From: Phallusia mammillata
Taxonomy: Eukaryota
Assembly (NCBI GenBank): GCA_965637545.1
Contig: OZ281499.1
Span: forward strand, 15,996,001 to 16,060,000
Reading direction: 5' to 3'
Length of the DNA: 64,000 nt
The position numbers were made by a program, and so were the translations under genes. Under the pieces are notes generated by a model. The model was not told the origin of the DNA. It did not search any database and saw only the letters and a list, made by a program, of their open reading frames with translations. This document shows, piece after piece, positions 4,462 through 59,690 of the stretch. The first letter of the stretch is position 1, and each line of letters opens with the position of its first letter.

Positions 4462-7400
4462 TTATGCACGCATATTGCCATCACTGCCGTTTAAGTCAAA
4501 GGCCACTTGTTCTTCACAGTGGTAACCTTTGTGGCCGACACCTCGATGGTCACTGGGTATCGAATATTTATTCACAGCGGAATGCCATCTAAACAATAGA
4601 ATAGATTTGTATTAGCTTTAAACAGAATACATAATCAGTAGCTTTATAAAGTATTACAGCTCAGACAATGAATGAATTATTCTCGATATAGGCTACTTAA
4701 TTCAACACTGGTTCACCCTTTGTTGTAAATCTTATTTAAGGCGGATTTAAGTTTTATGTATTACACTAACATAGAATAAAAAAAAAACATCACCAGGATT
4801 TCGTGGAAAAACGGCTTAACATTCCAGAAAAAGCGTATGGTTAAAAATTACCTCTTGCTACCTTTATCGCACTTTGGAAAACAACGAAATAGGATGTAAA
4901 AAATTTATTGATAATTATTTTTGATTAAAAGAAGTCTTTCACCAGCTAGTAATGACTTTGACAGTATAAATAAACATACTTGACGCTGGTTTGGTAATCT
5001 TCGGCTTCTCCACAGTTTCGCAGGAACGTCCAGTAAGCGATAAGCTTTGAACGGTTGAGATACCCCACCATAACGCTGACCAATGCAAGTACAGTTCCAC
5101 AAATTATAATAAAAGCAAGTTGGGCTGGAGTAAGTTTGAATTCTTTCACACCCCAATCGCTGTGACAGTAATGAATTTGTAGCTCATCCAGTCGCGCCAG
5201 CGTCAAACCTTAACACAAAAACAAAAGTTTAGAAAAACCTATTTTAAGTCGTTTGAATTAGTTACGAATTTTATCAATGACGTAATTTTAAAGACGTCAT
5301 TTATTAATTTATGACGTCATGTATAACTCGCATGCCAATCCCCCTTGTTCCACCCTATACGTCACTGGTGTTACCGAGCAGACAGCGGTAGGTAGGAATA
5401 GTCTGGTAGGTAATGAAGCGTGCACTCGTAACGAAGTCGTATTGATTAGTGCATTACATGCCATTTGTACAAAGCAGCACATAAATAATAGAAGGGCCAA
5501 GAAACTCAAAGGACCCTTTGTGGCTTATGCCGTGTGTTACAACCTACAATAGCTACGCCTCAAAGGCGCTTTGGCCAAATTACATTTGAACATTTTTTGC
5601 ATAGTTTTATGGTCGGACACTTAATGCAAAGCTTGTCTTATTGTTTCTGAACAATTTGTACCTATATTAAGTATCTGGTCCACTTAAGCATAGAGTATTT
5701 AGAGAAGCGTTGTCAAAAACTTTAAACAATTTTTTAGTTTCTCCCAAATGCGTTCGGATGTAAATTATATGCTAAAATTGACGAACCGCACACATTTGGC
5801 ATTTCAATTTAATGATAAATTAACAAAAAAGTATTCATCACTGTGATTGGCCCTGAGATCTCATACTTCACGTGATATAAAAGCAATTTGTAAACGGGTA
5901 GACAAAAAAACGATATGTGCTTTCCAATCTAAATATTGTTGCCATTGACAAACAATTTATTGCATTTTCCACAAAATTTATTTTACTAAAACGTATACAT
6001 ATATTTACGTATTTTTACTATTACAGACCCAGTTGCTTTAATAATATACCGTTGCAGAATTGCAAGCGGGTCCGAACCCGGCACGAACCCAAAAGTATAA
6101 GCCCGAAACCCGGCGAATCGTTTTTATGTTTAAAAGTTTGATTGACAGGTCTATAATCAAGAAGAAATGCACAATGGGCAATAATAGACAATGGCCTATG
6201 CAAGACATTTCATAGCCAAAACCCAACCCCAAATCTGGGCCGACTTACAATTCCGTACCATCATAAACACCGCCAGGTATGTCTGCCTTGGAAACCTCTT
6301 TTGCATTAAAAGCAAGTTACCTTTCAAAGGAGACGGTTTGTCGCAAGCCAGCTTTTTCCAGTCGGTGATAATCGCTTTTCCGCTGCTCTCAAACAGAAAA
6401 TGCATGGCAGTTTTAATGCTGCAACTGCAATCCATAGGGTTGCCCCCTAACAGTAACTTTACTTGTGGTAGATTGATGTCATTGCCCAGAAGACGATAGA
6501 TCGGTGTCCTACTGCGGTGTTTTGTCCAAATCGTTTGCGAATGATGCAGTATTTCGTCGCTAAAACCGGTAATGTTGTTGTACGTCACATCAACCAAGAT
6601 TTTTCGAATAGAATCGATAACGTCCACTAGAGGCGCTGGAGTGTCCGCATTGCTTGAATTGGGAGCAAGCTTGTTCCGATATGATTTAGACTCAGATTGT
6701 TTGTCAAAAAGTGCCCACAGCTTCAGTAAGGTTTCTTGATTAAAATTGTTGTGTGAAAAGCTTAGAAGTTCAATTGGCGAGTTTTTCAGAACGTTTTGCA
6801 GTACAGCAACATTTGGTATTCGTAAACTGTTATTGCCCAACATCAATCGTTGAAGATTTGGGAAATTTAGCGTTTCACGACCGGGTAGATAAAGACCACC
6901 GACCTTAATGCCCGTAACTAGTCCAGCCTGAAAAACTCTCCATATCGTTTTTGGTATTTCTCGACTAGCAACGACATTTATCAAGCTCAGGTCTTGTAAA
7001 CTCCACGCAACCGGCCACAGGAAAGAATTGTAAAAAGCGCGGACAAACGGATTTCCATTCAGAGATAAAACTGTCAAGTTTTTAAAGAATGCAAACGCAT
7101 CTTTGTCTATAAACTTTATCCCGTTGTTGCTTAGGTCCAGAAAATGAACTTGTCTGAATGATTTTAAACTTTCTGCATACAAAGTGTCATTGGGCACACG
7201 ATTGTTTGTATAAGTTAGCGCAGTTGTCCAAGTTGGCAGATTTGGGAGGGCTAAGCGACCCCCCGAGCATGTAACCTCTGAGCAGTTGAAAGAACACGAG
7301 CACTTGGGTGGACAGTTAGCCGGACGATATGTTGTGAAATCAGGAAGTTCTGTGGCGGTGTTTGAGTTGGTGACGGCTGTAAAAACTGAAAGCAAAATAT

Positions 7401-8296
7401 ATAAACTGCTCTTTATTTCGAAACAAATATATGAACACTGTGTCGAATAAGCACCGAAGGCTCTTGCATTTATAAACAAACTCAAAAAGCTGAGTAAAGG
7501 GTATGTGGTGCCCATACCATGTAATGTCTATACCAGGGGTTCCCAAACTTTTTTGGTCTGTGGCCCAAATGTCTATTGAATAGCGATTCGTGGCCCACCA
7601 TGTGCTGTAAATTTGGGCACAAACAAAAAAATTCAAAAACAGGCGAAATGTTTTCTAGTAATTTATTTTAATGAGATACATGCTCCTGAAATTTGGCTAC
7701 AAGATTCGGAATTCTTTGCAAAAATTATGTTTTTCAAAACAAAGCGCATAACATCTACAGTATAACAAAACAGTAGAATCTGTTCCAATGGCTCTGTGGC
7801 CCATTGAAAATGTCTTGGTGGCCTAGTACTGGGCCATGGCCCACAGTTGGGGAACCACTGGTCTATACAGTATGAATTTTTGTGACCTATTAAACCTATC
7901 ACAAACCACAGCGAAGCAGTTAGGTGGCTGCGTACAAGTACATACCGTTGTGCAAGGGAATATACCATCAAAAAGTGTGGTGAACCAACATGGTAACAAT
8001 AAGTGTAAAGAGATATAAATGCTTGCTACAGGGTTTTATTGGGTCCCAATCTAGTCGGCGTTAACCCGAGATGCTAGGCCTAAATGAAGTATTACTAATG
8101 TGTATAACATGGTAATAACTAAAAAGACTAATACATGTTCCATATCACTACTTAGACAATTCACAAACTTACAACTTGTGGCGTTGGCAGGACTTAAAAC
8201 CTCGGTAACTGTAGTGGTCTGTTTTGCAGTTGAAGTTTTCAGCATTGCAGGCAATACTCCAGTTGTAAAAAGAAACAACAACCATCTAAGAGTCAT
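4462..8296 (-). CDS. Trophoblast glycoprotein (TPBG/5T4/WAIF1)-like single-pass LRR protein, 4 exons, about 511 aa
   Basis: Exons 8296-8173 (signal MTLRWLLFLFTTGVLPAMLKTSTA), 7376-6321 (acceptor could also be 6 nt upstream), 5208-4980, 4588-4462; phases 1,1,2 are consistent. LRRNT CPPKCSCSFNCSEVTC, LRRs FLDLSNNGIKFI / VLSLNGNPF / RLMLGNNSL / LLSFSHNNF, LRRCT GGNPMDCSC...LAC. TM and juxtamembrane GTVLALVSVMVGYLNRSKLIAYWTFLRNC resembles TPBG IVLALIGAIFLLVLYLNRKGIKKW. Confidence 0.8.
7534..7860. mobile_element. Non-autonomous hAT (Charlie/Buster-type) MITE in intron 1 of the TPBG-like gene
   Basis: TIRs CAGGGGTTCCCAAACT / AGTTGGGGAACCACTG; perfect 8-bp TSD GTCTATAC at 7526-7533 and 7861-7868. 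Confidence 0.92.
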
Positions 8297-14500: not shown

Positions 14501-17500
14501 TTTCCTTTTGCTATACACGTTTTGTTTAAGGATTTCTTATCCATGTTAATCTAAAGTCCAGACACAAATGCAGAACCACAGTTTGAAAACACACTTTCGA
14601 CGAAAATTAACAAAAACATGTGTTTTGAAAAAAAAAAAAAACGTTTCAGGACTAAGAATAAAGTATCAAATAATTGTAAAAAACAAATCATGAACTAAAA
14701 TGCAAATTCAAATTTGTTTTTACGCTTACCATCGCTCCAGAGAAATGACGCCAAGTGTGTAGACCGAAAGCTGTGACGAAAAAACCGAGAGAAAGCCGAT
14801 AACGTCACAACCCCCGAACGCTTGCCATTCCACCCCGAACTTATAATATTCCCCGGAGCTTTTGCTGTCCATGGCAGACAGGGCAAGAACGTAAATTCCC
14901 ATACACAAGTCCGCAAAGGCAAGATTCAAAATCAGGAATTTCGGAACCGAGAGATGGCGCTGTTGAGTCCTCGACTTGTCGACGGCGACCGCGAGCAAAA
15001 CGAACATGACGAAGAAATTGCCGAAAACAGCCAAAGTTGCGACACCCCATGAAACAACGACCAGTCCTGGGTGTCCTAGCAGGTTTTCGCAGGGATTGAA
15101 AACGTCTGGTTGGGGCGAACACTTAACGAGGTTCCTGTACACATGCTCCCTTAAAGTTCCATTTTTGTCACGGTAACACATCTTCGTAACCGTTGCTGAG
15201 CCATTGTTTTCGGTTGAGACGGTCGCTGGTCTCCAAGGTTGATTGTTGGGGTCACTACACAAGAATACTTGTTTTTAAACTTACTTCTAAGGCACGAAAA
15301 TCAGGTTTTTATATAGGCATTTTAATAGGGCCGGTACTAAGAATTTCGTAAATACTTTGAAACTGCGACGACTTTTGTACTGATTAATGGCAGAGAAAAG
15401 GCGGTCGTGGTGCATGAGTCATTCGTCGTGCACTAAACAAGCCTGACTGTCCTGCACCTTTATCGACCGATTAAATGTCCCTTGCTATGAAGCTAACTTT
15501 GTGCATCTTCTGTTCAAAGCAGTAAAAATTATCACAGCTTTCAAAATTGGAGCTTACTTTATTATTTTTGGTTTTAAAGATGGACAACTTTAAAGTTGAT
15601 AGTATTAAATTAGCCACTACAAAAATCAGAAATGTTCTGGAGTTTACCAACACAACAAAATATACTCCAATTTGAAAACAACAGATTTATCGCCAAAACG
15701 TGCAGTTATTGTCTGCAAATATACGTTCATGTAAATTTACCATGATTTCTGGGCTTGTTGCGACAATATTGCACTAATCAAAATATTTCTTTTTCGAATT
15801 TAATTACATCCGATAAGCTGTACACGAGAGTCAACCGGAAGATTAAAACTGTTTTGGCATGTTGACTTGGTTTGTTCACAACAGCAGACTTTGATGATTG
15901 CAATTACGTCACTAAGACACGAATTTGTTCGCGCCAATTTGCCGCGGGTCACAAACGGGAAGAATGTTGATTGGAATCTCTCTGGTTGATATACAAGCGT
16001 CCGGCTTCAATTAGCTCATAGCGGAAAATGTAGCACTTGTAACAATGCCTAATTCCTTTAATCTTTTTTATGCCTGCGTTTACCGTGAGGTCAAAATTTA
16101 TACCCAATTTTGCAGCGAGTACCAACAAACATATACGTTACAATAAAATTGTTTTTTGGACAAAACAATTTTGTTTATTATTGCAAGAATATTTTGTAAG
16201 ACCCGTAAAAAATTGAAAATCGGTAAAAAGTTGGATAGGTTTGGGTCTTTTGCATCAAACGTTTAACAAAAACAACACAAGATTAAAGTGTTGAAACTGC
16301 ATGCCTAGAACTATTCAAACTTAACAAAACACATCTGTAGATTAAATTAGCTCGTTTAGCAGTTTTAAGCTTGATGTTAGCCTTGGCAACATGCCAAGTG
16401 TTCGTTGGAAAGCCTTTCTATACAGCCTACATGCTTAATTATCTTCATAAGATTGGTTTCCCCTTCAATACACACAACGGCTGATCAATCAGGATATTCT
16501 TATCGCGGGATGCCGTTATCTTAATGAAGAAAAACTCATTTGTGCTCTTTACCCCTCAAGTGTGATTGAAATTGGAAACCCATAGCAACGCGTGTGGTCT
16601 TTAGCTCCCGTTTTCCATTCACCTAAACTCCTGTAGGCAGTAAAACCCCATTATCTCAAATAATGTGTACGGTTCTAATGCCTCCAAAAAATGCCGGTAA
16701 AAGCGAAACGAGGGAAAATATTTGAGAAAATTTATTTCCTTCCAACGACAGTCTTTTCTGATTTATACTCCTTATATTTGTTTTTTTTTCGCTGGTTTTT
16801 TCATCTAAGTTTACTGCTGTAGTTTTTAAATCAAAGGCGTTTCGCAGGACATTCTACCTTTTGAACGTTCGAGTAATTTAAGTAAAATTACATATGCCAG
16901 AAGAGCTCTTTATAAACTTGAGTTCAAGTAATTCTTTCTTTTTACAACTATTCTGGTAACCCTTTCCCCGCACACCTAACGACATGTTGAACATCGTGTT
17001 TTTACATTTGTCACAAATTTTCATACATAAATTGTCATGAAATGTGGAATCCATAACGTTTAAACTAACAGCCCATTTGGCCCATTACTCTAAAAAGTTC
17101 CTCTACGGTTTTTATAAAACAAGAAACATGGATGGGAATTTTGCAAAAAAGAATTGAATAAAATTTTCAAACCTGTCCCACTTGTCAGTGCTGGAGTCGG
17201 TGCCAAAGTTGTAGGAGGTGATATCGCCTGTACCCGCGTAGTCCGTAAGATCGTTTGTCTCTTCACCAGTGAACGAATAATCGTGAAAGATGATGATCGA
17301 TTCTGGGAAACAGAAATATGATAATGAACTTACGTGATTACTGATCTGGAGGTAACAACTTGGATAATGAAACAATAAACAAATTGAGTAAATTAGTGGA
17401 AAGGTTTGTGGAGACCATGATGCTTTTCAATTAGGTAAAGTATATTGACGTCATTTTTAACCTATTCCTCGTTCATGGCAGGGACCCAAATTTCAGATGG

Positions 17501-47180: not shown

Positions 47181-48416
47181 AAATAAACTTACTAATTGAA
47201 AATGCACTTTACATTTCAGTACTTGTGACTGTAGAACATATTTGCAGTTTTTACTTTGCGAAGTTTTTGTCATTGTTTTTCATGTGTTTTTTTGTCATAG
47301 AAATCTGCCTAAAAGCACATGTAATCTTTTATGATGCCTACAGGTCAAATTTGATTGTTCAATTTCAGTTTTTACGAAGGAAATCATACTTGACATGTTG
47401 AGTTTGGAGTGACTTTCATATCTACAGTAAAACTGTTCGCACTGTAAATCTAACATTGGAAAGCAAATTATGTGAGCCACATTTTACAAACTGAAATTGT
47501 GGCAATTCAGATGATTGAACCAATGTTTTTATCTTGCTGCAATAAGCAATGTTTCCTGCATTGGTATTACGATCTGTGTATATATCAACCAAATGGAACA
47601 AGACTGTTTGCTGCTCAAGTTATATACCTTTTTTGAGAAATACAAACACCGTAACTGTTTCAAAAGAGAAGAATGTGAACTATTACCCAACTTTAAGCGA
47701 AATGCTTGTTTGTTTTTTTACGCGAGAATTTGGTTTACCTTTGAATTTAAAAAAGTTTGGATTGTATTTTTGATTTCTATTGCGGGGATTTTTGGCGGTA
47801 ATCCCTTTTTGCGGTCAGCAGCGAACTTCAGTCCACTTGGAATAAGCAAAGAGATTATAGAAGCCAAAACTACAAGTTTATTTCACAAATATGGGTAAGT
47901 AGGTTAAGCTTTAAGCGAATATTGCGAGGTATGACTCCTTGATTTCCACATTCGGAAGTGTTTACGGGTGTACTAAGATATGGCTTTGCATTAGACACCA
48001 TCGTGAATAGGAAAACTACTGGTTTTGTTGTTGAATTGGCTTTATTTTACTCAGATACAGTTGAGCCTACTTTGCTATACAAAAGCCGTTAAAACGTATT
48101 TGGCATTGGTTGTCGTGTTTTGTTTCAATTTTGTTTTTTGTCGGGAGACTGCTTGATCCATGTCTAGGCTAGGCTACAGACATAAAAAGCATCTATTCCT
48201 GGCAAAGCGGGCATCAAACGTCGTGTAAAAAATATACTGGCAATAATATTGTATTTACACACAAGCACCACAGAAAAAAGAAACGTTTGTACCTGAAAGT
48301 ATACACTTGTACCACTAAAAGAACATAATACACCTTACTAGCTCACATGTGCGTTTTTTCATGCAAGTCCAACTAGAAAAACAGCTAAACTTGTAACCAT
48401 AACAACAAACCGCAAA

Positions 48417-51400
48417 TTATAGGTCAATTTTTGGAAACATTTGTGGCAAGGAGGACAATTCTAAGTAACTTGAACTTTCGAAGTTGCACTTTGAACTTGG
48501 ACGAAAAAAGGTATTTACAGTGGACGCTTCTGGAATATCTGCACAGGGAGAAGATGGTTCTAAAGGCCAGGCTGTATTTGTGGTGCGCTGGGGACTATTG
48601 GTACGCGATAAGTCTTTCTGTCCGATTTTTATTTCGGTCGGGTGTGACTGATGGCGTATTTGGTTGCTTTTTCGCTGGTGCCAGCCATGCATATTGTGCT
48701 CAAGGTTTAGAACGTCTAATGGCGAAGGTGGTGGCGACTCATCAGAAAACGAAGACCAATCAAGTGGATAACCTGAGTCAGCTGACCTGCATGAATCAGA
48801 TCTGTTTCTGACTGGTTCAACACGCCCAGTGATGCGGGAACAACAGCGCGAACAACAACCGCTGCGTCTTTGACAGTAATGGTGATCTCTTCCTGTGTGA
48901 TACTGCACTGCTGGTAATGGGTTTGCTGCGCCGTGTTGGTGCTCGATGTGCAAAGGTGTGTTAAAAATGCTTTCATAACCAAATGAATGCACTCTTCTTC
49001 GACGATGCATGCGCCTTTGATACAGTGATGAACGTTTTGGCCTGCTGGTTGCCGTCGTTTCAGCCTTCGCCACGTATGTGCTGACGAAATGAGAACTATC
49101 AGCACTCTCAGTGGAGTTGGATCTGTTTAACGGAACTCTTTTCGCGTGTTTTAGTGTCCCAGCCATTTCGGCTTGCGGATGGGTTTGCGGACTGTACGTT
49201 GGATTTTCGACTTCGTACTGCGATGCTCTGCATCGCTTCTTGACGTACTTGGTCGTCATGGCAGCTGGCCCGTCAAGGAATACATCGTCAAGAGATGAGC
49301 TTGGCGACGTATGCAGGTTACCAAGACACACAGTTGGTTTGTCTTCTACGCATGTCTCAAGCACTGTGGTTCTACAAGCTCTCATCTGTAAGCTACGGGC
49401 AAGTTCATGTTCAATGGTGGTGTATTCAGAGGTGTGAAAGTTGTAGTTTGATGGCCGTGCATCATTCTCTCGGTAGATGGCGTGCTCGTGCGCTTTTTCA
49501 ATCTCAGCATCTTGAGTGAATGGCGAACATGATTCAAAACTATTTGCTCGGTGTACATCTACTTTGTGTATGTTGACCATAGAAACATCGGGGGATATAT
49601 CGCGCTCAGGCGCCGGGTAGTGACTTGACCCCTCACTGGCTGCGTTACGGATGTACATAAAGTCATTTAGTGAAGAAGTATCTGCTCTTGACATATCGGG
49701 TACTACTGGTCGCGGACATTCCGTGTCTGAGAGTGAAGCAATAGCAACCATGCTGTCTTTGTCTTCTTCACTATCTGAAAATTTGGGCACCAAGCATTAA
49801 CAAAAAACACGAAGATTCGCTTGGTCAAACAACTGATTTTTTTATGTAGACCTTAAAGCAAAACTGGATAAAGTGACGATTTGCCACATATGTCGTTTCA
49901 TAGTGGTTGTATTTTAGCTGCCTGAATTCCTTAAAGCAGGGATGTGATTTTTTACCTGTGTCGTTTGCAGAAGATGTGCTTCTGACGGGAAGAAACGCTT
50001 CAACGCATTCCGATGCGTTTGAGTGGTCAGTAATCTCATCCAACCTTGACATGGTAGGGTTCGATGTTTCACCAAAGTTTTTGTCAAATTCTTGCAGGAT
50101 TTCAGCCTGTTTTGTTTTGCAAGATGAACAGTTAAACGCGAAAAAACTTGGAAGATTTGGAGATTGCTTTTTCGTTTCAATTGTTTCAAAATTACATCGA
50201 TCAAAAAAGATTAAAAACCAGTTTATAAGAACTCTTGAGATATTATTGAAAAATTTTCAGAAGTCTATCCGCTTTAAACAATTTTATTTGCATTGGCTTT
50301 AAATGTAGCCAACACGTTTTCAGGTCTTTCTTTTTAGGCCTACAAAGTTACCAGTTTTTCTGGTAGATCCATTTCTTTTTTAAAGAAGTTGTCGTACGCC
50401 CGCTTTAACTTGTAAATGGCGATGCACACAACCAGCAGGCCCAATGTTAAGGTCACAGCAAGAATGATGGGCGACTTTTCAGTTTGTTCTTTGATGAAAT
50501 CTGAAGTCAAGAAACATTCTATATCAGTGGTTCTTAACCTTTTTATAACGGCCGAACCCCTACGATATTCTTCAGCCTTTGGTCGAACCCCAAGTTACAT
50601 CCTAAGTTTTTAACCCATTTTGTTTGGTGGGTCATAATTAGTTTTTGTTTAAACGTAGTGGCAACAGTTACTGTTTGTCATTTTGTTAAATTCTGATATA
50701 ATACAAGCAACTTGTTTCAGGATTGCTTCAATTCCGGCAATTTTTAGTTTTTACCAAAATGAAGCATTGTATTTTTAGCATCTGTACACTAACATGAAAA
50801 AGATGAAGTAATAAGTTTTTGCTGCCAACAAAATTTCGTTGTTTTTCTGCTTACGAACAACGCGAACAATGCTCTTTGTTACGTCAAAAAAAGAAAAGAA
50901 AACCTTAGTGCAGGGTTGCACAACCATTTTGCTAGGACGGCCGCGTCGCAGATTCTTATTTTACCAACGGCTGCCATTTACCTGCTTATTTTTGGTTTAA
51001 AATACTTGGTTTATATCATGTATTTACCATCTAATAGCGCCCCAAAAGCCCAGATTAATTTCTAGCTCGGTGCATAGATTGAGCTGCACAGCGAGGAGAT
51101 CAGTCTTAAGTGTTTATGATGTCACAATCTACATTGTGATGCTTGTGGTACCTGTTTTGTTCGCATGCATTGTTGGCACACAATAGGCGTACAAAAAGTC
51201 TGACACATATGGTTATTAGGCTGGTAATACTCTTTTTAGTTCCACAAAAACTGTTTAGAGCAGTTTAAAACACCCCTGCCTAAGTTTAACCTTCCAGTGT
51301 TTTGATATTGAGCAAATACAAATTGCTGTTTTTAGCGACTATAGACCCTAAGGCAGGGGTTCTTAACCTGGGGTGCACGCACCCCCAAGGGGTGCGAGAA

Positions 51401-54400
51401 CTGTTCCTAGGGGGTGCGGGGATGCTGAATCATTAAGGTTGGTTAGGTCTATTCTATTTAAGCAATTACAGAAGGGGGAGCGAAAATTGGTTAGTGATTG
51501 GAAAGGGGTGCAGCAAGGAAAAAAGGTTAAGAACCACTGCCCTAAGGCCTAAAGTGTGACAAAAACGAGTATTTGTATTGTACTTCAAAAAGACCTTCGT
51601 CGAACCCCTGATTCGGCGTTGCCGAACCCCTGGGGTTCGATCGAACACCGGTTAAGAACCACTGTTCTATAGTGTTAAGGTGATGTGCCGAAAGACCTTT
51701 TTGTTTTCCGGTGGTACAATTTCCCCTTAAGCCTATTAAACTTCGAAAAGTACAAAAACAAAGACTCAGAGTTGTTTCCATTTGAAACAACCGTACGCCG
51801 ATCCCAAAACTTCCCAACACATAGTAAACCGCCAAACAACCAATATATACCTGCAATATCAGGGCTTGGCTGCACAGTTTTGCAGACTTCTCTCCATTCG
51901 CTTTCGTAGGAGTAGGTTTCTTCGGTGATTCGCAACTTCACGCACATGTGAGCGTTATGAATCGGTTTCTCAAACAACGGCAATGTAATCAAAGTCATAT
52001 CGAAACTTTGCTTGTTCTCCTGAAGTAACAAGGTATTTTGTTAAACTTGTGTAGGCTACGTGTAAATTGCTGGGTGGTCAATTTTAGAACTTGTGCAAAA
52101 TATGCTTCACTTTTCTTTGCGAGCTTCGCACATGTTCCTTAATCAATCGAATTTCAATGACGGCTTGTTTTTGGTTTTATTCGGTTTCGCAAGGACCTCC
52201 AACAAATTGTGCTCTTTTTGAGAGGATTTTAAACACGTAATTTTTCTTTAAAGACAAGGTTTGCTTCATGTGCTCTTGTTAAATACTTGAAAACTTCTTG
52301 GGCCTGGCATCACCAACTTTCGGACCCGATTCTGGCTTTTTTCAAAAAAAAAAAAACGCTATAAAACATTATGTTGGGAATGTTAGAATTAAATGCAACT
52401 TCGATACGTAATATAGGCCACCAAGATAATTTCAATTTCAAAAATTGTTGAGCAAATTCTTACCCTTGGAGTTTGATTCGAGTCATTTGTGGACCAGTAT
52501 CTGATCATATAATACAAGGCCTCTCCGTAGTAACAATTTAGTGATTTGTTGATCGGCAAAACCTGATGAGGTTTGTTCATGATCCGAAGTTGCGTTTCAG
52601 AAAATACTCCGATAATGTCGAAGCTTGGCGGGAGTATCTTGTCTGTGGAAGACATTATGTTTACTAGTGCGATAGCACCATGGTGTTTATCGCAGTTAGC
52701 CGGCATTCGTGACACAGGACAACGCAATCAGTTGGATTGTTTTCCTCATGTTTAACGAGATTTAAAGCGTTTGCAGGCCTCTTGTATAGGTCTGTACCTG
52801 CTGGTGATTCGAAAAAAGGTGACTGTTTGGTTTTTTTCTTATAAAAGGAGGACATGTGAAAAGGTTTAAAAACGATCGTTAAGCCCTTGAAAGTTGCTTT
52901 TTTGGACATTTCAACAAACGTATTTTTGATGCACTTGGAAAGGTAAACTAAATCAACAACTACTAAATGTATCAAGAAAATGAAAGCCTGGCTTAAATCA
53001 CCTGGTAACTGCAAAGGAGTAGTTGTTTTCTCCCAATCGCTGCATATCTTCTTCTGATATTCCAAGCAACTCCGCACACGAAAATGGAACTTTCCTTCGT
53101 TTGTGTAATCGGGACATTCCTTGTCAAATATATCGTGGATAGGCTCGTACACATGACATGATGATTCCTTAGTCGGGTGACAGTTGTTGACCGCTATCCA
53201 GTCGTTACTTTCTATGATCAAGCTAAACAACAGATTCGAATCTAATTTAAGCACAAATAGGAGATTTTCAATAAATATATTCGTTGGGATTTAACTGGTT
53301 AAAAATATTTTTGTTTCAAGCCAATAATGCCATGTACTTAGGTATAGTCCAAGCAGACTTGGACAAATAGATAATTATGGTTTGAGTCCAAGTCTAAGTC
53401 CTTGTTGTGGACAATTTACATCAAATTAACGGTTAAACTTGCTTGCACTAGACTAGAGCTATAAAACCTATGATATTCGGCAAAGCATTGCAAGTTTAAA
53501 TGAAATTGTGCTTTTCTATGACAGTCCAACCGTGTTTTGCAAAAAAAGCGTTAAAGTTGTAGTACATCAGTTGCAAAACGAGTCATGTAAACTTTGACTG
53601 AAATTAACCAAACCTATTTTTCGAAAAACTATTTTGGATGACTTACCCAAGGACTTCTACTTCAAAATAATTGTTGTAGTTATCTGTCGGTGGTTTCCAC
53701 CTGAGTGTGTGGTTTACGTTGCTGGAATGTGCTGTGACGTTACTCGGGCCAGGAATTCCTAGAAAAGTTACTTCGGGTTACTAACGGCTTAACGCCACAC
53801 ACGACATATGTCGTACCTGCTAATGAGCTTTGCACATCGTGACAATGCTGAATTCCATCAGGAAGTTGGAAACAAAATTTTGATGCGTTTGGTTTTCTTG
53901 TGTCTAATTGGTTAAGAAATATCACATGTTCTGCCACATCGATTTTGTGTTGGTAGATCTACAAAAAGCAGTAGAGTGCATGGTCTGTAATCTTTACTGA
54001 ATGATACGATTCAGTTAGCGGTCGTACTAACCCTAAGTGGTAGTGTCAAATCATGACCTTTGTACAAAAAGGACTAAGCTTTACTTTAAAAAAAAACTTT
54101 GCGTGCTTACCACTAATTTTTCAGAGTTGGAATGAGTCCACCAATACTGAATGTCTGTGTACTGACAAGGCAGCTTGGAACAATAAAGTACGGCATTCGT
54201 TTGTTGGTAAAATCCAAGAAATCGAACTGGCTCTTGTGCTGCAACAGACAAGGCACTATTTAGGGTCAATCACAAACGTCTCCTGCCTGTCAAAGTCACA
54301 ACAAATATTCCATCGAATTTTAGGCGTATCAATTCTCGGTAATAGTTGCATATAATATAAACATTTTTCGTGCAATTCAAATGTACGGTTGGTACTTTGT

Positions 54401-57358
54401 GCTTCAAACCACCATACCAAAATATGATTGGCGATGGGTGCAGAACAATCGAGCAAATCATGCAATAAGGGTCTTTACAATTGGTGACATTTAGGTTTAA
54501 CCAATCTCTACTGGAACAGGACTGGAGTTTAAAATTGATCCGCTCACCAACATTCATTCCAATGTGTGTTATTTTGTGGCAATGCCAGCCAGATTTTGTT
54601 GGCGCACTGGATTTCGAAATTGAATGTGGTAACAGACCATTCCACTTCAAATACTAACCATCCCAGCAATTCAGTTGTAATTTACCAAAAGTGTGGTAAT
54701 GAACTGTGCAACAAATGGCCTTTGAGCATATTCCTGAGTGAAGCAGCTTTCGGATGTAACTAAATGCAAATAACGTGTTGTGCACCATGTAAGACGCTAC
54801 TTGATCTGAAGGCGCAGTCGCCCGGCAAGTTTTCCTTATTCCGCGCCATTTCAACTGACGAGGCTCGATAAGGGTCCAATTGAGAGGAACCCCGTTCACA
54901 ATACGAGCCTATTTCCCTTGTCAAAACTGTCGCAAGGCCGGAGAAATTCCAGATTGACTTGCGGTCATATTTCTGTTCAGTGCAGAAGTTTGGGCGACCA
55001 TTGTTTTGAATTTGATTCAGTGGACGGAGGCGCTAAACGTGCAACATGACGCTCTAATGACTTGTTTCGCAACAACTAGCCCTGATAGCACATCTGATTG
55101 CCCCAGAAGCTTGTGACAAGCCTTACAAGAGCTGACGTTTTACAAGCAATTGGTAGAGATTTTATTAGGGTTTAGGTTTTAGCAGTTTTTGACGCTACTG
55201 GTTTCATATTCGGCCATGGTTGTGCCTATGTTTAGCCAATTTATGTTGGTAAAACTTAATATTAACAAGGCTGTTGACCTTTAATACAGTTTGCCAATGG
55301 CCTGCGGATCTTATTTCATTGTCTGAACCCTTGACATGTTACGAGATAATCTGAACTGTGGACGGATTTTAAAAGTAAACTTGCCATTAAAAAATACCAA
55401 GAAGAAGAAATGACACACAGTGTTTGTATAATATTAATACCAGGATGCTAAACACAGGTTCTTTGGATGTTTGTGTGTATGTTTGAAAGTGTGGACAAAT
55501 GTGAGATAAACCCAAGTTGAACTAAGTTGCACCAATAACACTTCTGAATTCGGAATGATATTTGTTAACTGTATATAGCACAGATATAGCCTAATTACAA
55601 AACCGTGCGACAAACAGTAAGAATCTTTACATGCACTTGGCCAAATGGAACTTTAACTCACAAACAAACATTACAAAACCGACTTCTTGCTGGTGACGAT
55701 CCTAAATTTGATTCTCGTGAAAAAAACTTCAAATATGTTGAAGGATATGATAAACGTAATACTCAATTTCTAACTCTATAAAAGTTTATTTTTGTAACGT
55801 AAAAAACGGGGAAGAGAAATGTACAGCCTAGTTCTTGCAAACCTTAGCAGTTGATTCTTTCTAAGAGACGCGCCAAGGAGAATGGGCGCTGTTGTGGCGA
55901 TTTTATTCGATACATAGACCATAGAGCATCATGCAAGAATATGAGTGTCCTGCAAACCCGTATAAGAAGAATCGTTTGCGTGAAAATACCGTAAGGCGTT
56001 AACCGAAGTTGTCAATCTAAATCCCGTAAAACGGATGGGATCAAAATAGACGACACAATGGGAGTCATTCTGAGTTAGGGCAGTAAGGGCTGTTATGAAA
56101 CTATAAATCCATTCCATACGCCCAAAGAGAGACTAGACATCAATGGTTAAACTGTATCAAGAGAGCAAAAAATTCATGACCATGCGCTTAACATTCAGAA
56201 CACATTCGTTCAGAAATCAAGTTGAAAACCGTGCGACACAACAATAAACCAAGTAGCTCTTGTAGCGATGTCTTACAATACAGTTGTACAAAATATAACG
56301 GGCAAATACTGTTTTATAATCGCCAGAAGCCTCAATCCGTTTGCATCACGAGTAACGAGTAAAAGTTCATAGAAAGTAGGATTGTGGTGGGAGCCTAAGT
56401 AAAACATCGTGTCAAGATATAAGGACAAAAACTGGAATATTTTCCAATCTAAATTGTGATTTCTCATCAAACTTGGTGTGAAATACGATTCTAACGCTAA
56501 TAAACAAGTGTGATTGTGTAAAAAGTTTCTTCGACAATATTACTTAGGCAGTCCATGTTTTTGGATGTAATAGTGTTTTGTACACGTATATGCTGGGATT
56601 GCCACGTTACTATAATCATAACAATGGATGCCAACATATACCTCAGCACAAAGGAAGTCAGATGCTTCCTGGCTAAATAACAATGCCTTGTACTCATTAG
56701 GTATTGGTTGTATTTCTAACAATATGTGTATCATCTATTAATCAAAGATAAACTTACAAGCGCTCGAATGCACTTAAGTAATGTAAAATATAATTTGCAA
56801 ACGTTTTGCATGCCCCCTCCTTTAAACAAATCTAGTTTTATACACTTCAAAAAACAGTAACGCTTCTGAATCACTTGTGTGTGGTAAATTTTGACAATTA
56901 TGTTACTATGCCGTTTTTAAATATAACTTTTATATATGCCGTGTTTTAATATTATTTTGGATGGTCAGTAAACTCCATACATTTTGACATTGAAAGTATC
57001 GCTTGCGTATCTTTTTAAAACTACCATTCTGCGCTGGTTTATTGTACATAAAGGTCCGGAAAAAATAAACTTAAAAAAAACGCCAATACCCAACATTCTC
57101 ATGCACCATAGCTCTAATAACAAGGGGCCAATACTATAAAAAGCGTTAATACTTTCCGGTTCTAAATTTAGCTGGTATTTCCAGCGCTTTGAAGGACGAC
57201 GCCATGATCGTATTGGTTGTAGTGCCTGAAGTTTATGCAATAGAAACGATATAGTTCATTAACTTACTTTCTAGGGATGTTTCAAGATCGTCAGAAGTAA
57301 CAACATTGATGAAAATTCCGGATAGCAAAGCGATGCGAAGAAAATATAATCCAAGCAT
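48417..57358 (-). CDS. Class II helical cytokine receptor-like protein (IFN/IL-10 receptor/tissue factor family): signal, Ig-like domain, two FN3 domains, TM, long cytoplasmic tail; at least 899 aa
   Basis: Exons 57358-57268 (signal MLGLYFLRIALLSGIFINVVTS), 54238-54111, 53958-53817, 53758-53647, 53222-53002, 52642-52464, 52019-51851, 50500-50352, 50106-49956 (weak acceptor), 49774-48417; 2700 nt in frame. D1: PGPSNVTAHSSNVNHTLRWKPP, W..VNNCHPTKESSC, FHFRVRS..SDW. D2: KILPPSF, MCVKLR..ESEWREVC. TM IILAVTLTLGLLVVCIAIY. No WSxWS. Extra exons between 57268 and 54238 are possible. Confidence 0.82.
50911..51278. mobile_element. Probable nested hAT MITE
   Basis: Ends CAGGGTTGCACAACC and AACACCCCTG; flanks CCTTAGTG / CCTAAGTT (6 of 8 match). 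The segment is absent from the related copy at 59691-60040. Confidence 0.55.
51354..51539. mobile_element. Nested hAT MITE (186 bp)
   Basis: TIRs CAGGGGTTCTTAACC / GGTTAAGAACCACTG; perfect TSD CCCTAAGG at 51346-51353 and 51540-51547. Confidence 0.92.
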
Positions 57359-57500
57359 CGGGTTGATGTAGTTTGTTAAATTAAGCAGTAAAAACGCGCT
57401 GTACTCTGTAAATATTAAAGTAATATTTTATTTTCAGAAAGTTATATTATTTCCATGCGGGGATGACCAAATTATACTAAACTTTGTTATGCACTGTATG

Positions 57501-57680
57501 CAATGGTGGGATTCAGCCGGTTCGCACCGGTTCTATAGAACCGTCTCACGAAATTTTATGAGATCAGCCAACATGTTAGCATTACTAGTTACTGTCAATG
57601 GACGTTTTGTACCAGATCCAGCTGAAAAATATGATTTTTGTGATAGAACCGGCTGACAAAAAAATTGAATCCCACCACTG
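57501..57680. mobile_element. hAT MITE (180 bp) just upstream of the cytokine receptor-like ATG
   Basis: TIRs CAATGGTGGGATTCA / TGAATCCCACCACTG; perfect TSD ACTGTATG at 57493-57500 and 57681-57688. Confidence 0.92.
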
Positions 57681-59690
57681 ACTGTATGCCTTATCAGATC
57701 TTAAGCAAAACCTCATTAGAGCAACTATTAGTCGCTGTTTTTTTCCTTCGTATTTCGACAAACGTCTTTCACTTTTGGCGGTTTGCTCCAACAACTGTTA
57801 ATTGGAAACTTCCTAATTGTTAAGACCGTGCACGGATACAGCTTGTTATTACACTTTGTTTTTTCTTGTACTTTACAAGACGGGAGTTATAATATCCTGC
57901 AACGCTTGTGGTCTATACACCCTAATTCTGTTCGATTATAAAGTACTGCACTTGTTTATCACATGTTTTTCCTCATCCCGACTATACACTGCGGCAACTA
58001 GGATTAGGAATTTTTTTAAATGTTCACAATTTATATACTTTTCGCGCCATTGGAATGCTTTTAGTATGGCTTTAAGATATAAAACTAGTATGGAAGCGAA
58101 ACGGACCACACACGAAAAATGTTATCAAATGTCAAAATTCCTCTTGTTATTTAGCCCGTGGTAAAGTATACGAAAGGCTACAAACAGTAGTTTTTAATCC
58201 TCAATATAACTTCAAACTTATAATTCTCAACATAGGTTCGTGACCTATGACAAAATTAGTTTGGGGTCAAATATATTTAATAAATCAAGCTGGTCTCAAA
58301 AACAGATTCGTTTTTTTCTCTCTCTTTTTTCTAGAACTGTCAAATCAATGTATTGTAACGTTGATTATTTGAAGATTGCCACAATACACAGTAGCATACA
58401 AGGCTATACTTACGCCAAGGTATGTTACAAGTTATAAAAAAACATGTTGTTACCTTACTACTTTGAATATGTATGTTACATATATCCTGCATGACCTTTG
58501 AACTTTCGTCTAACTCCCCACTTACCTTAATAAACAGATACCTAGTAAAATCGAAATGGCCAATTAACTAACAACCTGCACGGCGTGGCAGTCTGTCATA
58601 GCTATCTAACCACTCCATAAAGCAATTGTTTTACAGCTCAGAGGAAACCCTCGTCGACTTCATGCCAAAACGATTGTCGTAAAGCCGATGCAAACATCAG
58701 GGCCCTCTGCGATTTGCAGGCTGCAGAAGTTGAAACAGTGTGTTATCGACACTTGTTAAGCAGCCGGTTAACACGAAACTTGTACGTTTGGTTGCAAGAT
58801 TATCCGCTTGTAAGTTTGCGTACAATCTTCGCGCCCTCAATCAGTCAAACTTATTGGTTGTAAGGGGCTGGTTATGTGGATTGTAATGTATTGAAAAACG
58901 ACACCATCATCAAGTGTCTTTGCAACTGTTTTAAAGGCTTTTAAAACATACAAGCTTCAACTAATATGAAAATCTCATTTTCCCGTTTTTGACCGCATGC
59001 GGCAGTAGCGATAATAATTAAAAGTAGTGGTAGAGCGGTTTGGAATGATAACTGAAGTTTTCGTTGTTTTAATATGAACAGCGACTGTTAAAAACGCGCC
59101 TAACCCAACATAATGACTGAGTTTGCGTTCAAGATGAGACTTTTTGACTGAAAAAAATCCCTAAAATTGTGTAACCTTCTGTTTGTTTCACGAACCCGGT
59201 CATAATTAAGTTCAATCAAAAGTTACATGTTCTTGTTTCGACGGCAAATTTCTTTGTTTAGAGTTTCTAACTTCTTTGGACTTCAAGTTATTTTACTTGT
59301 TTGTCATGATTGTAATGCACAAGCTTTGGTGAAGGTTTCTGAAGAAAAACTTTTACAAACTTACATTTTTACTGGATGACACTTACATATTAATGTGATT
59401 TGTTTCAAAGTTTCTAATCCAACCCCATGCATATAGATAGAGGACCGAAATATTCAGGTTTACAGTTATACCTAATGTATCAAAACTGAGACGCAGGATT
59501 GAAGTGCACAAACGCATGAAACTTAAACAAACAGACCAAGCAACTATTCGTGTATTTAGATTTGGGATTCGTTCAGCCCGGGTACTTGAGATATGACGTC
59601 GGTACTTCGCACAATAAATGACAAGTGGACCACACCGTCAAGATCAATATACGTGTGGAAAATTAAACTTCGTGTGATATATAGCTATAT

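What the first reader, a model, noticed from the sequence alone, without database searches (positions are those of the whole stretch)
48417..57358. Interferon/IL-10-family (class II) cytokine receptor-like gene in an apparently invertebrate chordate genome
Seen: ten in-frame exons encode a signal peptide, two FN3 domains, a TM and a juxtamembrane YKLKRAYDNFFKKEMDLPEKLAEILQEF. Intron phases around the two FN3 domains are exactly 1-2-1-0-1. The ORF track shows it only as fragments. Established: the 1-2-1-0-1 pattern is typical of cytokine receptor genes. The motifs PxNV..S.N...L.W.P, the D1 C-x7/8-C pair, RVR..S.W, the D2 CV...EW..VC pair and the lack of WSxWS mark class II receptors (IFNAR, IL10R, tissue factor). 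The juxtamembrane segment resembles that of IL10RB. Inference: this family is characterised mostly in jawed vertebrates, so this gene may be the receptor of an uncharacterised pre-vertebrate JAK-STAT cytokine system with an unknown ligand.
Basis: partly seen in the sequence, partly recalled or inferred. Interest (0 to 1): 0.88.

Follow-up and report, generated by a model that had tools for sequence, protein, structure and literature searches.

The report
Sea-squirt class II cytokine receptor gene
This is a real, expressed gene for a cell-surface receptor of the interferon/IL-10 receptor family in what earlier notes call a sea-squirt genome. Such receptors were already reported in Ciona and amphioxus, so it is a useful new member, with an extra front domain and no known ligand.

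Summary
On the minus strand, ten GT-AG exons (57358 to 48417) give one 899-aa reading frame: signal peptide, a ~90-aa Cys/Trp domain (probably Ig-like), two FN3 domains, one transmembrane helix and a 523-aa tail. Transcript contigs from four RNA runs (three studies) join nine of the ten exons exactly at the predicted borders. Only the join to exon 1 is inferred.

The class II reading is well supported but not formally closed.
- Single exons already hit Pfam Tissue_fac (E=9e-6 and 0.029, colinear) and Interfer-bind (E=0.018), and no other receptor or FN3 family.
- Intron phases are 1-2-1-0-1-0, the published class II signature.
- There is no WSxWS and no class I cysteine motif.
- The invariant Pro and Leu of the class II Box1 (PxxLxF) sit 17 residues after the membrane.

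A 2011 paper cites one class II receptor each in Ciona and amphioxus, and 2026 preprints test amphioxus and lamprey CRFBs functionally. No relative of this particular protein was found in any library. Ligand and signalling remain untested.

The parts
57268..57358 (-). Exon 1: start codon and signal peptide (aa 1-30), ends in phase 1
   Evidence: ATG, hydrophobic leader and GTAAGT donor. RNA contigs extend 58-119 nt 5' of exon eA, which fits this exon, but the join was not directly seen.
54111..54238 (-). Exon eA: first half of the N-terminal ~90-aa domain (aa 31-73), phase 1 to 0. Carries Cys50 and the YWW at 61-63.
   Evidence: Splice borders are confirmed by RNA contigs. A weak, non-significant antibody V-domain B/C-strand pattern appears (E=0.27). 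No Pfam hit.
53817..53958 (-). Exon eB: second half of the N-terminal domain (aa 74-120), phase 0 to 1. Carries Cys102, which lies 52 residues after Cys50.
   Evidence: RNA joins 53958|54111 and 53758|53817. Cys spacing. No Pfam or PDB hit of use.
53647..53758 (-). Exon e2: first half of FN3 domain D1 (aa 121-157), phase 1 to 2
   Evidence: Pfam Tissue_fac PF01108, E=9e-6, 25.9 bits, profile positions 23-57. IL-20RA and IL-20RB D1 starts are among the top PDB matches, ungapped but not significant. RNA joins seen.
53002..53222 (-). Exon e3: second half of D1 (aa 158-231), phase 2 to 1. Has C172-x7-C180 plus Cys194, 210 and 218.
   Evidence: Pfam Tissue_fac E=0.029, 14.7 bits, profile positions 61-87, colinear with e2. 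RNA joins seen.
52464..52642 (-). Exon e4: first half of FN3 domain D2 (aa 232-291), phase 1 to 0
   Evidence: Pfam Interfer-bind PF09294, E=0.018, 15.8 bits, profile positions 3-56. RNA joins seen.
51851..52019 (-). Exon e5: second half of D2 (aa 292-347), phase 0 to 1. Has C317-x19-C337 and no WSxWS.
   Evidence: Cys pattern and absence of WSxWS. RNA joins seen. No Pfam hit of its own.
50352..50500 (-). Exon e6: stalk, transmembrane helix (about aa 358-377) and first half of the Box1-like motif (FF386-387, P394-E-K-L397). Ends in phase 0.
   Evidence: Hydropathy maximum 2.77 at residues 359-377. RNA joins seen. Box1 consensus from PMC5394478.
49956..50106 (-). Exon e7: membrane-proximal cytoplasmic segment (aa 398-447), phase 0 to 1
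   Evidence: RNA joins 50105|50351 and 49774|49956.
48417..49774 (-). Exon e8: Ser/Pro/Arg-rich tail (aa 448-899) with 17 tail Tyr, including NPTY-SPQ (Y641, the only YxxQ). Stop TAA at 48417-48419.
   Evidence: Open frame and motif scan. Covered end to end by RNA contigs. No relative among 1.84 billion representatives.
48259..48416 (-). 3' UTR, at least this far
   Evidence: The X4 contig runs 91 nt beyond position 48350. AATAAA lies 370 nt past the stop.

Best explanation

Shown here:
- The exon structure and its splicing.
- The layout: signal peptide, extra N-terminal Cys/Trp domain, D1, D2, TM helix, 523-aa tail.
- The class II-specific sequence and gene-structure marks.

Inferred:
- It acts as a long-tailed ('R1-type') ligand-binding chain.
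- An unidentified secreted ligand, most likely a class II-type helical cytokine, brings it together with a partner chain or a second copy.
- The JAK bound to the membrane-proximal FF...PxxL segment is activated (published work finds a single JAK in Ciona).
- Tail tyrosines, notably Y641 in NPTY-SPQ (a YxxQ STAT-docking type site), are phosphorylated and recruit a STAT or PTB-domain adaptors.

The extra N-terminal module has phase 1-1 borders, so it fits insertion of an Ig-like module into the phase-1 first intron of a canonical seven-exon CRF2 gene. My odds are about 0.85 for family identity and about 0.5 for the JAK-STAT cytokine-receptor mechanism.
For: -: ten GT-AG exons, one 899-aa frame, phases 1-2-1-0-1-0 from the D1 intron onward.
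- RNA contigs from four runs in three studies join nine exons at the predicted borders, with no indels in exons.
- three separate exons each have a CRF2-specific Pfam family as top or only hit, in the right order and colinear with the profiles. Tissue_fac scores 25.9 + 14.7 bits against a cut-off of 27; Interfer-bind scores 15.8 bits. No fn3 or class I family is listed.
- the D1 start aligns ungapped with IL-20RA and IL-20RB.
- a single TM helix, C-x7-C in D1, a Cys pair in D2, no WSxWS, no class I 4-Cys motif, no PxP Box1, P394xxL397 lying 17 residues after the TM helix, and YSPQ.
- Literature: 1-2-1-0-1-0 is the conserved phase pattern of IFN receptor genes (PMC8863823), and lamprey CRFBs show 1-2-1-0-1 (bioRxiv 10.64898/2026.05.30.728932). 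Pro and Leu of PxxLxF are invariant in class II receptors, and IFNLR1 has PWF five residues before the motif (PMC5394478); here FF lies six residues before it. Ciona has JAK, two STATs and SOCS (PMC3296744).
Against: - No full-domain Pfam score, structure model or fold search could be made for the spliced ectodomain.
- Each exon hit alone is below Pfam's curated cut-off, and Interfer-bind rests on e4 only.
- e3, e4 and e5 find nothing in the PDB by sequence.
- The third Box1 position is Glu, not the favoured Phe.
- The 1-2-1-0-1 phases are, from my own knowledge, shared with class I receptor genes, so they do not separate the two classes on their own.
- No ligand gene, partner chain or paralogue lies in the window.
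- A structure-based screen found IFN homologues in lancelet and lamprey but not in the tunicate Styela clava (bioRxiv 10.64898/2026.05.30.728932).
- The tail has no detectable relative anywhere, so conservation of its motifs is unknown.
- That the organism is an ascidian rests on earlier notes, not on a test here.
Confidence: 0.62

Rival explanations
1. A true CRF2-fold protein that does not work as a JAK-STAT cytokine receptor. It could be a tissue-factor-like cofactor, a decoy or binding protein, or a receptor that signals through other adaptors on its long tail (NPxY/PTB, SH2).
For: - Tissue factor shows that the family includes a non-cytokine member.
- Box1 lacks the favoured Phe.
- No IFN/IL-10-like ligand has been found in tunicates (bioRxiv 10.64898/2026.05.30.728932).
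- The tail carries NPTY and two [S]xYxx[IL] sites.
- The tail is unrelated to any known receptor tail.
Against: - The 523-aa tail is unlike tissue factor's, which from my own knowledge has only a short tail.
- The invariant Pro and Leu of the class II Box1 lie at the right distance from the membrane, with an aromatic pair before them.
- One YxxQ site is present.
- JAK, STAT and SOCS genes exist in Ciona (PMC3296744).
Confidence: 0.22
2. A class I-type (gp130/IL-6R-alpha-like) cytokine receptor: an Ig-like domain followed by a two-FN3 cytokine-binding module.
For: - The layout of an N-terminal Ig-like domain followed by a two-FN3 module is typical of class I 'tall' receptors (my own knowledge).
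- Ciona is reported to have two class I receptors (PMC1963337).
- The FN3 intron phases are shared between the classes.
Against: - No WSxWS, even relaxed.
- No C-x9-10-C-x-W-x26-32-C-x10-15-C motif.
- No Cys at all in the first D1 exon.
- No PxP Box1 near the membrane.
- Pfam lists only Tissue_fac and Interfer-bind, not class I families.
Confidence: 0.07
3. A generic Ig/FN3 adhesion or recognition receptor whose likeness to CRF2 is only the shared FN3 fold.
For: - Contactin-5 FN3 scores as well as IL-20RA against e2 in the PDB.
- All PDB hits are non-significant.
- The genome is said to be rich in fast-evolving Ig receptors (earlier notes s1-351703, s1-349154).
Against: - Three independent exons hit the two CRF2-specific Pfam families in the right order. 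The product of their E-values is about 5e-9.
- The generic fn3 model is not listed.
- The whole six-intron CRF2 phase signature is present, including the phase-0 intron after the TM exon.
- Box1 Pro and Leu are present.
Confidence: 0.05

Closest known systems
Vertebrate long-chain class II cytokine receptors (IFNLR1, IL10RA, IL20RA, IL22RA1; CRFBs of fish and lamprey)
   Same: - Signal peptide, D200 module (Tissue_fac plus Interfer-bind FN3 pair), one TM helix and a long unstructured tail.
- Intron phases 1-2-1-0-1-0.
- A C-x7-C pair in D1 and a Cys pair in D2, with no WSxWS.
- Box1 Pro and Leu about 17 residues after the membrane, with an aromatic pair before them as in IFNLR1.
- The D1 start is in register with IL-20RA and IL-20RB.
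   Different: - An extra ~90-aa Cys/Trp (probably Ig-like) domain, encoded by two extra exons, sits in front of D1.
- There is one extra intron in the tail.
- The Box1 third position is Glu.
- Three additional Cys occur in D1 and one in D2.
- The tail has no detectable homology to any known receptor.
- Ligand unknown.
Ciona intestinalis 'apparent class II cytokine receptor' (GI 198428337; Krause and Pestka 2005, as cited in PMC3210801)
   Same: A class II-type receptor reported in an ascidian. It is probably the same gene family, and possibly the orthologue.
   Different: It could not be compared here. Whether it has the extra N-terminal domain or a long tail is unknown to me.
Amphioxus BjCRFB1/BjCRFB2 (bioRxiv 10.64898/2026.08.17.745176)
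   Same: Non-vertebrate chordate class II receptors with more than two extracellular domains (four and three FN3). They are proposed to be primordial IFN receptors that signal through STATs.
   Different: The extra domains there are described as FN3, whereas here the extra domain looks Ig-like. Amphioxus has candidate IFN-like ligands, and none has been found in tunicates.
IL10RB
   Same: From my memory only, IL10RB has a juxtamembrane L-P-x-x-L-x-E-F-L segment. That would match L-P-E-K-L-A-E-I-L here.
   Different: IL10RB is a short-tailed shared chain, and this protein has a 523-aa tail. The likeness was not tested with any tool.
Class I gp130/IL-6R-alpha-type receptors
   Same: An N-terminal Ig-like domain in front of a two-FN3 cytokine-binding module.
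   Different: This protein has no WSxWS, no class I Cys motif, no PxP Box1 and no Pfam class I hits.

Membership tests
[quoted passage not shown] | Type I membrane protein: signal peptide, ectodomain, single TM helix, cytoplasmic tail without an enzyme domain | tested here: met
   Hydrophobic leader at aa 1-22. The only strong hydropathy peak is at residues 358-377. The tail has no Pfam domain.
[quoted passage not shown] | D1 belongs to Pfam Tissue_fac (PF01108) | tested here: inconclusive
   Exon e2 scores E=9e-6 and 25.9 bits (profile 23-57). Exon e3 scores E=0.029 and 14.7 bits (profile 61-87). The two are colinear and sum to 40.6 bits against a cut-off of 27, but each piece alone is below the cut-off and the joined domain could not be submitted.
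[quoted passage not shown] | D2 belongs to Pfam Interfer-bind (PF09294) | tested here: inconclusive
   Exon e4 scores E=0.018 and 15.8 bits (profile 3-56), against a cut-off of 21. Exon e5 has no hit.
[quoted passage not shown] | Gene structure: two exons per FN3 domain and intron phases 1-2-1-0-1-0 | tested here: met
   Phases come from the exon model, with borders confirmed by RNA. The pattern is as stated in PMC8863823 and bioRxiv 10.64898/2026.05.30.728932. From my own knowledge, the FN3 part of the pattern is shared with class I genes.
[quoted passage not shown] | Class II cysteine pattern (a close pair in the second half of D1, a pair in the second half of D2) and no WSxWS | tested here: met
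   C172-x7-C180 and C317-x19-C337 are present, and there is no WSxWS or relaxed form. Actual disulfide bonding is not testable here.
[quoted passage not shown] | Box1 PxxLxF with invariant Pro and Leu near the membrane | tested here: met
   P394-E-K-L397-A-E399 lies 17 residues after the TM helix, and FF386-387 lies six residues before it. The favoured Phe is replaced by Glu (consensus from PMC5394478).
[quoted passage not shown] | Ectodomain fold superposes on solved CRF2 structures better than on class I or other FN3 pairs | not tested
   No database copy or homologue was found to stand in for it.
[quoted passage not shown] | Binds a class II helical cytokine and activates JAK/STAT | not testable with these tools
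   Needs experiments. No ligand candidate lies in the window.
Class I cytokine receptors | WSxWS in the second FN3 domain and C-x9-10-C-x-W-x26-32-C-x10-15-C in the first (PMC1963337) | tested here: not met
   The regex finds neither. The first D1 exon has no Cys.
Tissue factor (coagulation factor III) orthologue | CRF2 ectodomain with only a short cytoplasmic tail and no JAK-binding segment (my own knowledge) | tested here: not met
   The tail is 523 aa and has a Box1-like motif.
Ig-like domain (N-terminal module, aa 31-120) | B-strand Cys, a Trp 10-15 residues later, and an F-strand Cys about 50-70 residues after the first; match to an Ig profile or fold | tested here: inconclusive
   Cys50, W62/W63 and Cys102 have the right spacing. 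Antibody V-domain matches are weak (E=0.27). Neither exon has a Pfam hit. No fold test was possible.

The most novel reading that the evidence does not exclude
This is the long signalling chain of a tunicate class II-type cytokine system. Its ligand would have diverged beyond recognition, since fold-based screens found IFN homologues in lancelet and lamprey but not in Styela. It carries an Ig-like domain in front of the D200 module, a layout otherwise known from class I gp130/IL-6R-alpha-type receptors and not from vertebrate class II receptors. If so, tunicates kept a class II receptor system and rebuilt it, rather than losing it. The receptor could then be used as bait to find the missing ligand.
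Probability: 0.3. Interest if true: 0.65.

Novelty: new member of a known kind. Interest (0 to 1): 0.45.

Why it matters
Where the interferon/IL-10 cytokine system began is an active question. [quoted passage not shown]

This gene model is RNA-supported and full length. It has a Box1-like JAK site and a STAT-type tyrosine, so it gives a concrete receptor to test:
- its ectodomain can be used as bait for the ligand;
- its tail can be tested against the JAK (published work finds a single JAK in Ciona).

The extra front domain, if Ig-like, would be an unusual layout for this class. The existence of such a receptor in an ascidian is not new in itself.

Tried and rejected
- **Exhaustive phmmer, tail.** The 451-aa tail exon against 1.84 billion representatives gave 0 hits. 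The protein itself is therefore not in that library, and no database id could stand in for the spliced protein.
- **Word-index search, e3.** Run through its stop-free 208-aa ORF, scoring residues 24-96 only. No candidate was found.
- **JGI metagenome scans.** The tail and e3 each found no relative.
- **ESM Atlas look-alikes of e3.** Scores were 0.47 or below, which is meaningless.
- **PDB phmmer on single exons.**
  - e2 gave IL-20RA and IL-20RB but also contactin, none significant.
  - e3, e4 and e5 gave none.
  - e6, with the Box1 first half, gave nothing relevant.
  - eA gave weak antibody-like matches, and eB a chance chitinase match.
- **tblastn of the ectodomain against the whole window.** No paralogue was found.
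- **Organism check.** The neighbouring LRR ORF and the Penelope-like RT ORF were searched to read the organism from hit names. The LRR hits were generic insect LRR proteins and the RT hits were unnamed ENA/JGI proteins, so both were uninformative.
- **Promoter scan.** No GAS, ISRE or NF-kB consensus was found in 1 kb upstream. This has little weight either way.
- **Rfam on 47-59 kb.** Nothing was found.
- **Left out.** Pfam, AlphaFold and Foldseek on the joined ectodomain, and a test of the IL10RB likeness.
- **Rejected.** Pseudogene (intact frame, and expressed in four runs) and tissue factor orthologue (long tail).

Full report
**What is there.** The feature lies on the minus strand. Reading stop-to-stop frames and placing canonical splice sites gives ten exons:
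- e1 57358-57268
- eA 54238-54111
- eB 53958-53817
- e2 53758-53647
- e3 53222-53002
- e4 52642-52464
- e5 52019-51851
- e6 50500-50352
- e7 50106-49956
- e8 49774-48417

Every intron is GT..AG. The joined CDS is 2700 nt and encodes 899 aa, with the only stop at 48417-48419. Intron phases in order are 1, 0, 1, 2, 1, 0, 1, 0, 1.

**Is it spliced that way?** One search found RNA runs of the same organism (coded 'organism A') that hold 0.23-0.44 of the sampled words of 48417-54238. The highest share, 0.44, equals the exon fraction of that stretch.

I laid Logan contigs of four runs from three studies on 48350-54300. Single contigs of 2814 nt (X1) and 2886 nt (X4) join e8, e7, e6, e5, e4, e3, e2, eB and eA at exactly the predicted borders:
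- 49774|49956
- 50105|50351
- 50500|51851
- 52018|52463
- 52642|53002
- 53222|53647
- about 53758|53817
- 53958|54111

All skipped pieces have CT..AC ends on the + strand, which is GT..AG on the gene strand. Shorter contigs of X5 and X11 repeat several joints. No insertion or deletion falls in an exon.

The contigs run 58 and 119 nt beyond eA. This fits e1 (91 nt) plus a short 5' UTR, but e1 lay outside the 6-kb limit, so that one join is inferred.

Six polymorphic sites lie in exons. Three are synonymous (eA, eB, e3), one is T93P in eB, and two are non-synonymous in the tail. That is too few to measure selection.

**The protein.**
- aa 1-30: signal peptide.
- aa 31-120 (eA+eB): a domain with Cys50, YWW at 61-63, and Cys102, which lies 52 residues after Cys50.
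- aa 121-231 (e2+e3): FN3 domain D1.
- aa 232-347 (e4+e5): FN3 domain D2.
- A short stalk, then one transmembrane helix at about residues 358-377.
- A 523-aa Ser/Pro/Arg-rich tail with 17 tyrosines.

Pfam at E up to 10 gave the following:
- e2 hits Tissue_fac PF01108: E=9e-6, 25.9 bits, profile positions 23-57.
- e3 hits Tissue_fac: E=0.029, 14.7 bits, positions 61-87.
- e4 hits Interfer-bind PF09294: E=0.018, 15.8 bits, positions 3-56.
- eA, eB, e5, e6, e7 and e8 hit nothing.

These are the two Pfam families that define class II cytokine receptors. They come in the right order and are colinear with their profiles. They are the top or only hit of three independent exons; e3's two weaker listings, Ig_NOMO and YecR, are neither receptor nor fn3 families. 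The generic fn3 model and the class I families are not listed. The two Tissue_fac pieces sum to 40.6 bits against a cut-off of 27, though neither passes alone and Interfer-bind stays below 21.

Against PDB sequences, e2 aligns ungapped over 24 residues with the first strand of IL-20RA (4doh_R, E=0.086) and IL-20RB (6df3_H, E=0.39). A contactin FN3 scores as well, and none of these is significant. Exons e3, e4 and e5 find nothing.

**Gene structure.** From the intron before D1 onward the phases are 1-2-1-0-1-0. PMC8863823 gives exactly this as the conserved pattern of interferon receptor genes. The 2026 lamprey preprint characteristic of ancestral class II receptors (bioRxiv 10.64898/2026.05.30.728932). 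From my own knowledge, the FN3 part of the pattern is shared with class I genes, so it supports 'cytokine receptor' more than 'class II'.

The discriminating marks go the class II way:
- There is no WSxWS, even relaxed.
- The class I motif C-x9-10-C-x-W-x26-32-C-x10-15-C (defined in PMC1963337) is absent.
- The first D1 exon has no Cys.
- D1 has a close C172-x7-C180 pair in its second exon.
- D2 has C317-x19-C337.

The two exons of the extra domain form a phase 1-1 unit. They sit in what would be the phase-1 first intron of a canonical seven-exon class II gene.

**Cytoplasmic part.** PMC5394478 reports that the Pro and Leu of the Box1 motif PxxLxF are invariant in class II receptors and that Phe is only favoured. 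It also reports that IFNLR1 has a PWF site five residues upstream. Here P394-E-K-L397-A-E399 lies 17 residues after the membrane, with F386-F387 six residues upstream. No class I type PxP lies near the membrane.

The phase-0 intron falls between L397 and A398. The tail has one YxxQ site (Y641, YSPQ), preceded by NPTY.

**The extra domain.** Pfam and the PDB give nothing solid. I treat it as probable, not shown.

**Relatives elsewhere.** None was found:
- The tail has no hit among 1.84 billion cluster representatives, not even itself.
- e3 shares no word triplet with any protein of suitable length.
- Two metagenome scans were blank.
- The window holds no paralogue.

I therefore could not build alignments, profiles, trees or a model.

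**Surroundings.** Neighbours in the window are an LRR ORF, a rhodopsin-type GPCR exon and a Penelope-like retroelement. None bears on the gene. That the genome is an ascidian rests on earlier follow-up notes (s1-355923, s1-351703, s1-349154). My attempts to read the organism from hit names failed. Very short introns (58, 152 and 181 nt) are in keeping with ascidians, from my own knowledge.

**How it most likely works.** Shown: an expressed type I membrane protein with class II marks. Inferred: a secreted ligand brings this long chain together with a partner. A JAK held on the FF...PxxL segment is then activated, and Y641 and other tyrosines recruit a STAT or PTB adaptors. Ciona has one JAK, two STATs and SOCS genes (PMC3296744, PMC3670263).

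The main rival is a CRF2-fold protein with another job: no tunicate ligand is known, Box1 lacks Phe, and the tail is unique. A class I or a generic FN3 reading is unlikely.

[quoted passage not shown] Two 2026 preprints take this further:
- One describes amphioxus BjCRFB1/2, with four and three FN3 domains, as primordial IFN receptors (10.64898/2026.08.17.745176).
- The other describes lamprey CRFB7/14 as an IFN receptor. It found IFN homologues in lancelet and lamprey but not in other invertebrates, with Styela clava among the proteomes screened (10.64898/2026.05.30.728932).

A tunicate review (PMC5465252) does not mention interferon, JAK or cytokine receptors at all.

So this is a new member of a known kind. 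It is well documented at the transcript level, with a possibly unusual extra domain, and it remains an orphan. The scan also holds a note of another Box1-bearing receptor elsewhere in this genome (s1-375445), which I could not inspect.

**Verdict.**
- Observation: confirmed.
- Class II identity: about 0.85.
- JAK-STAT cytokine-receptor function: about 0.5.
- Novelty: modest.
- Interest: 0.45.

Noticed in passing
window 50513-50544, 51338-51391, 51520-51555, 51627-51676 (intron between e5 and e6): Nested MITE-like elements have terminal inverted repeats around CAGTGGTTCTTAACC. RNA contig depth over 51335-51732 reaches about 150-920, against 5-20 on the exons, with many loose ends into other sequence. 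This looks like a repeat family that is abundant in transcripts.
   Followed up: partly
Unnamed relatives at about 45% identity occur in ENA/JGI assemblies.
   Followed up: partly
window 14729-15262 (-): An exon encodes the first transmembrane helices of a rhodopsin-family GPCR (7tm_1, E=1.5e-9, profile 12-84). The rest of the gene should lie at lower coordinates.
   Followed up: no
window 6199-7515 (-): A 439-aa ORF carries leucine-rich repeats (LRR_4, LRR_8). Its best database relatives are insect LRR proteins at only 27% identity.
   Followed up: partly
window about 57500-57700, just upstream of the start codon: By eye, a roughly 190-nt inverted-repeat element (GGTGGGATTCAGCCGGTTC ... GAACCGGCTGAC..GAATCCCACCAC) lies about 150 nt upstream of the ATG. 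It is probably another MITE in the promoter region.
   Followed up: no
window 57171-57236 (-), in intron 1: A possible small in-frame exon (AG acceptor, phase 1 in, GT donor) lies just after e1. It cannot precede eA in frame, because it would leave phase 2, and the RNA contig lengths fit direct e1-eA splicing. I take it as chance.
   Followed up: partly
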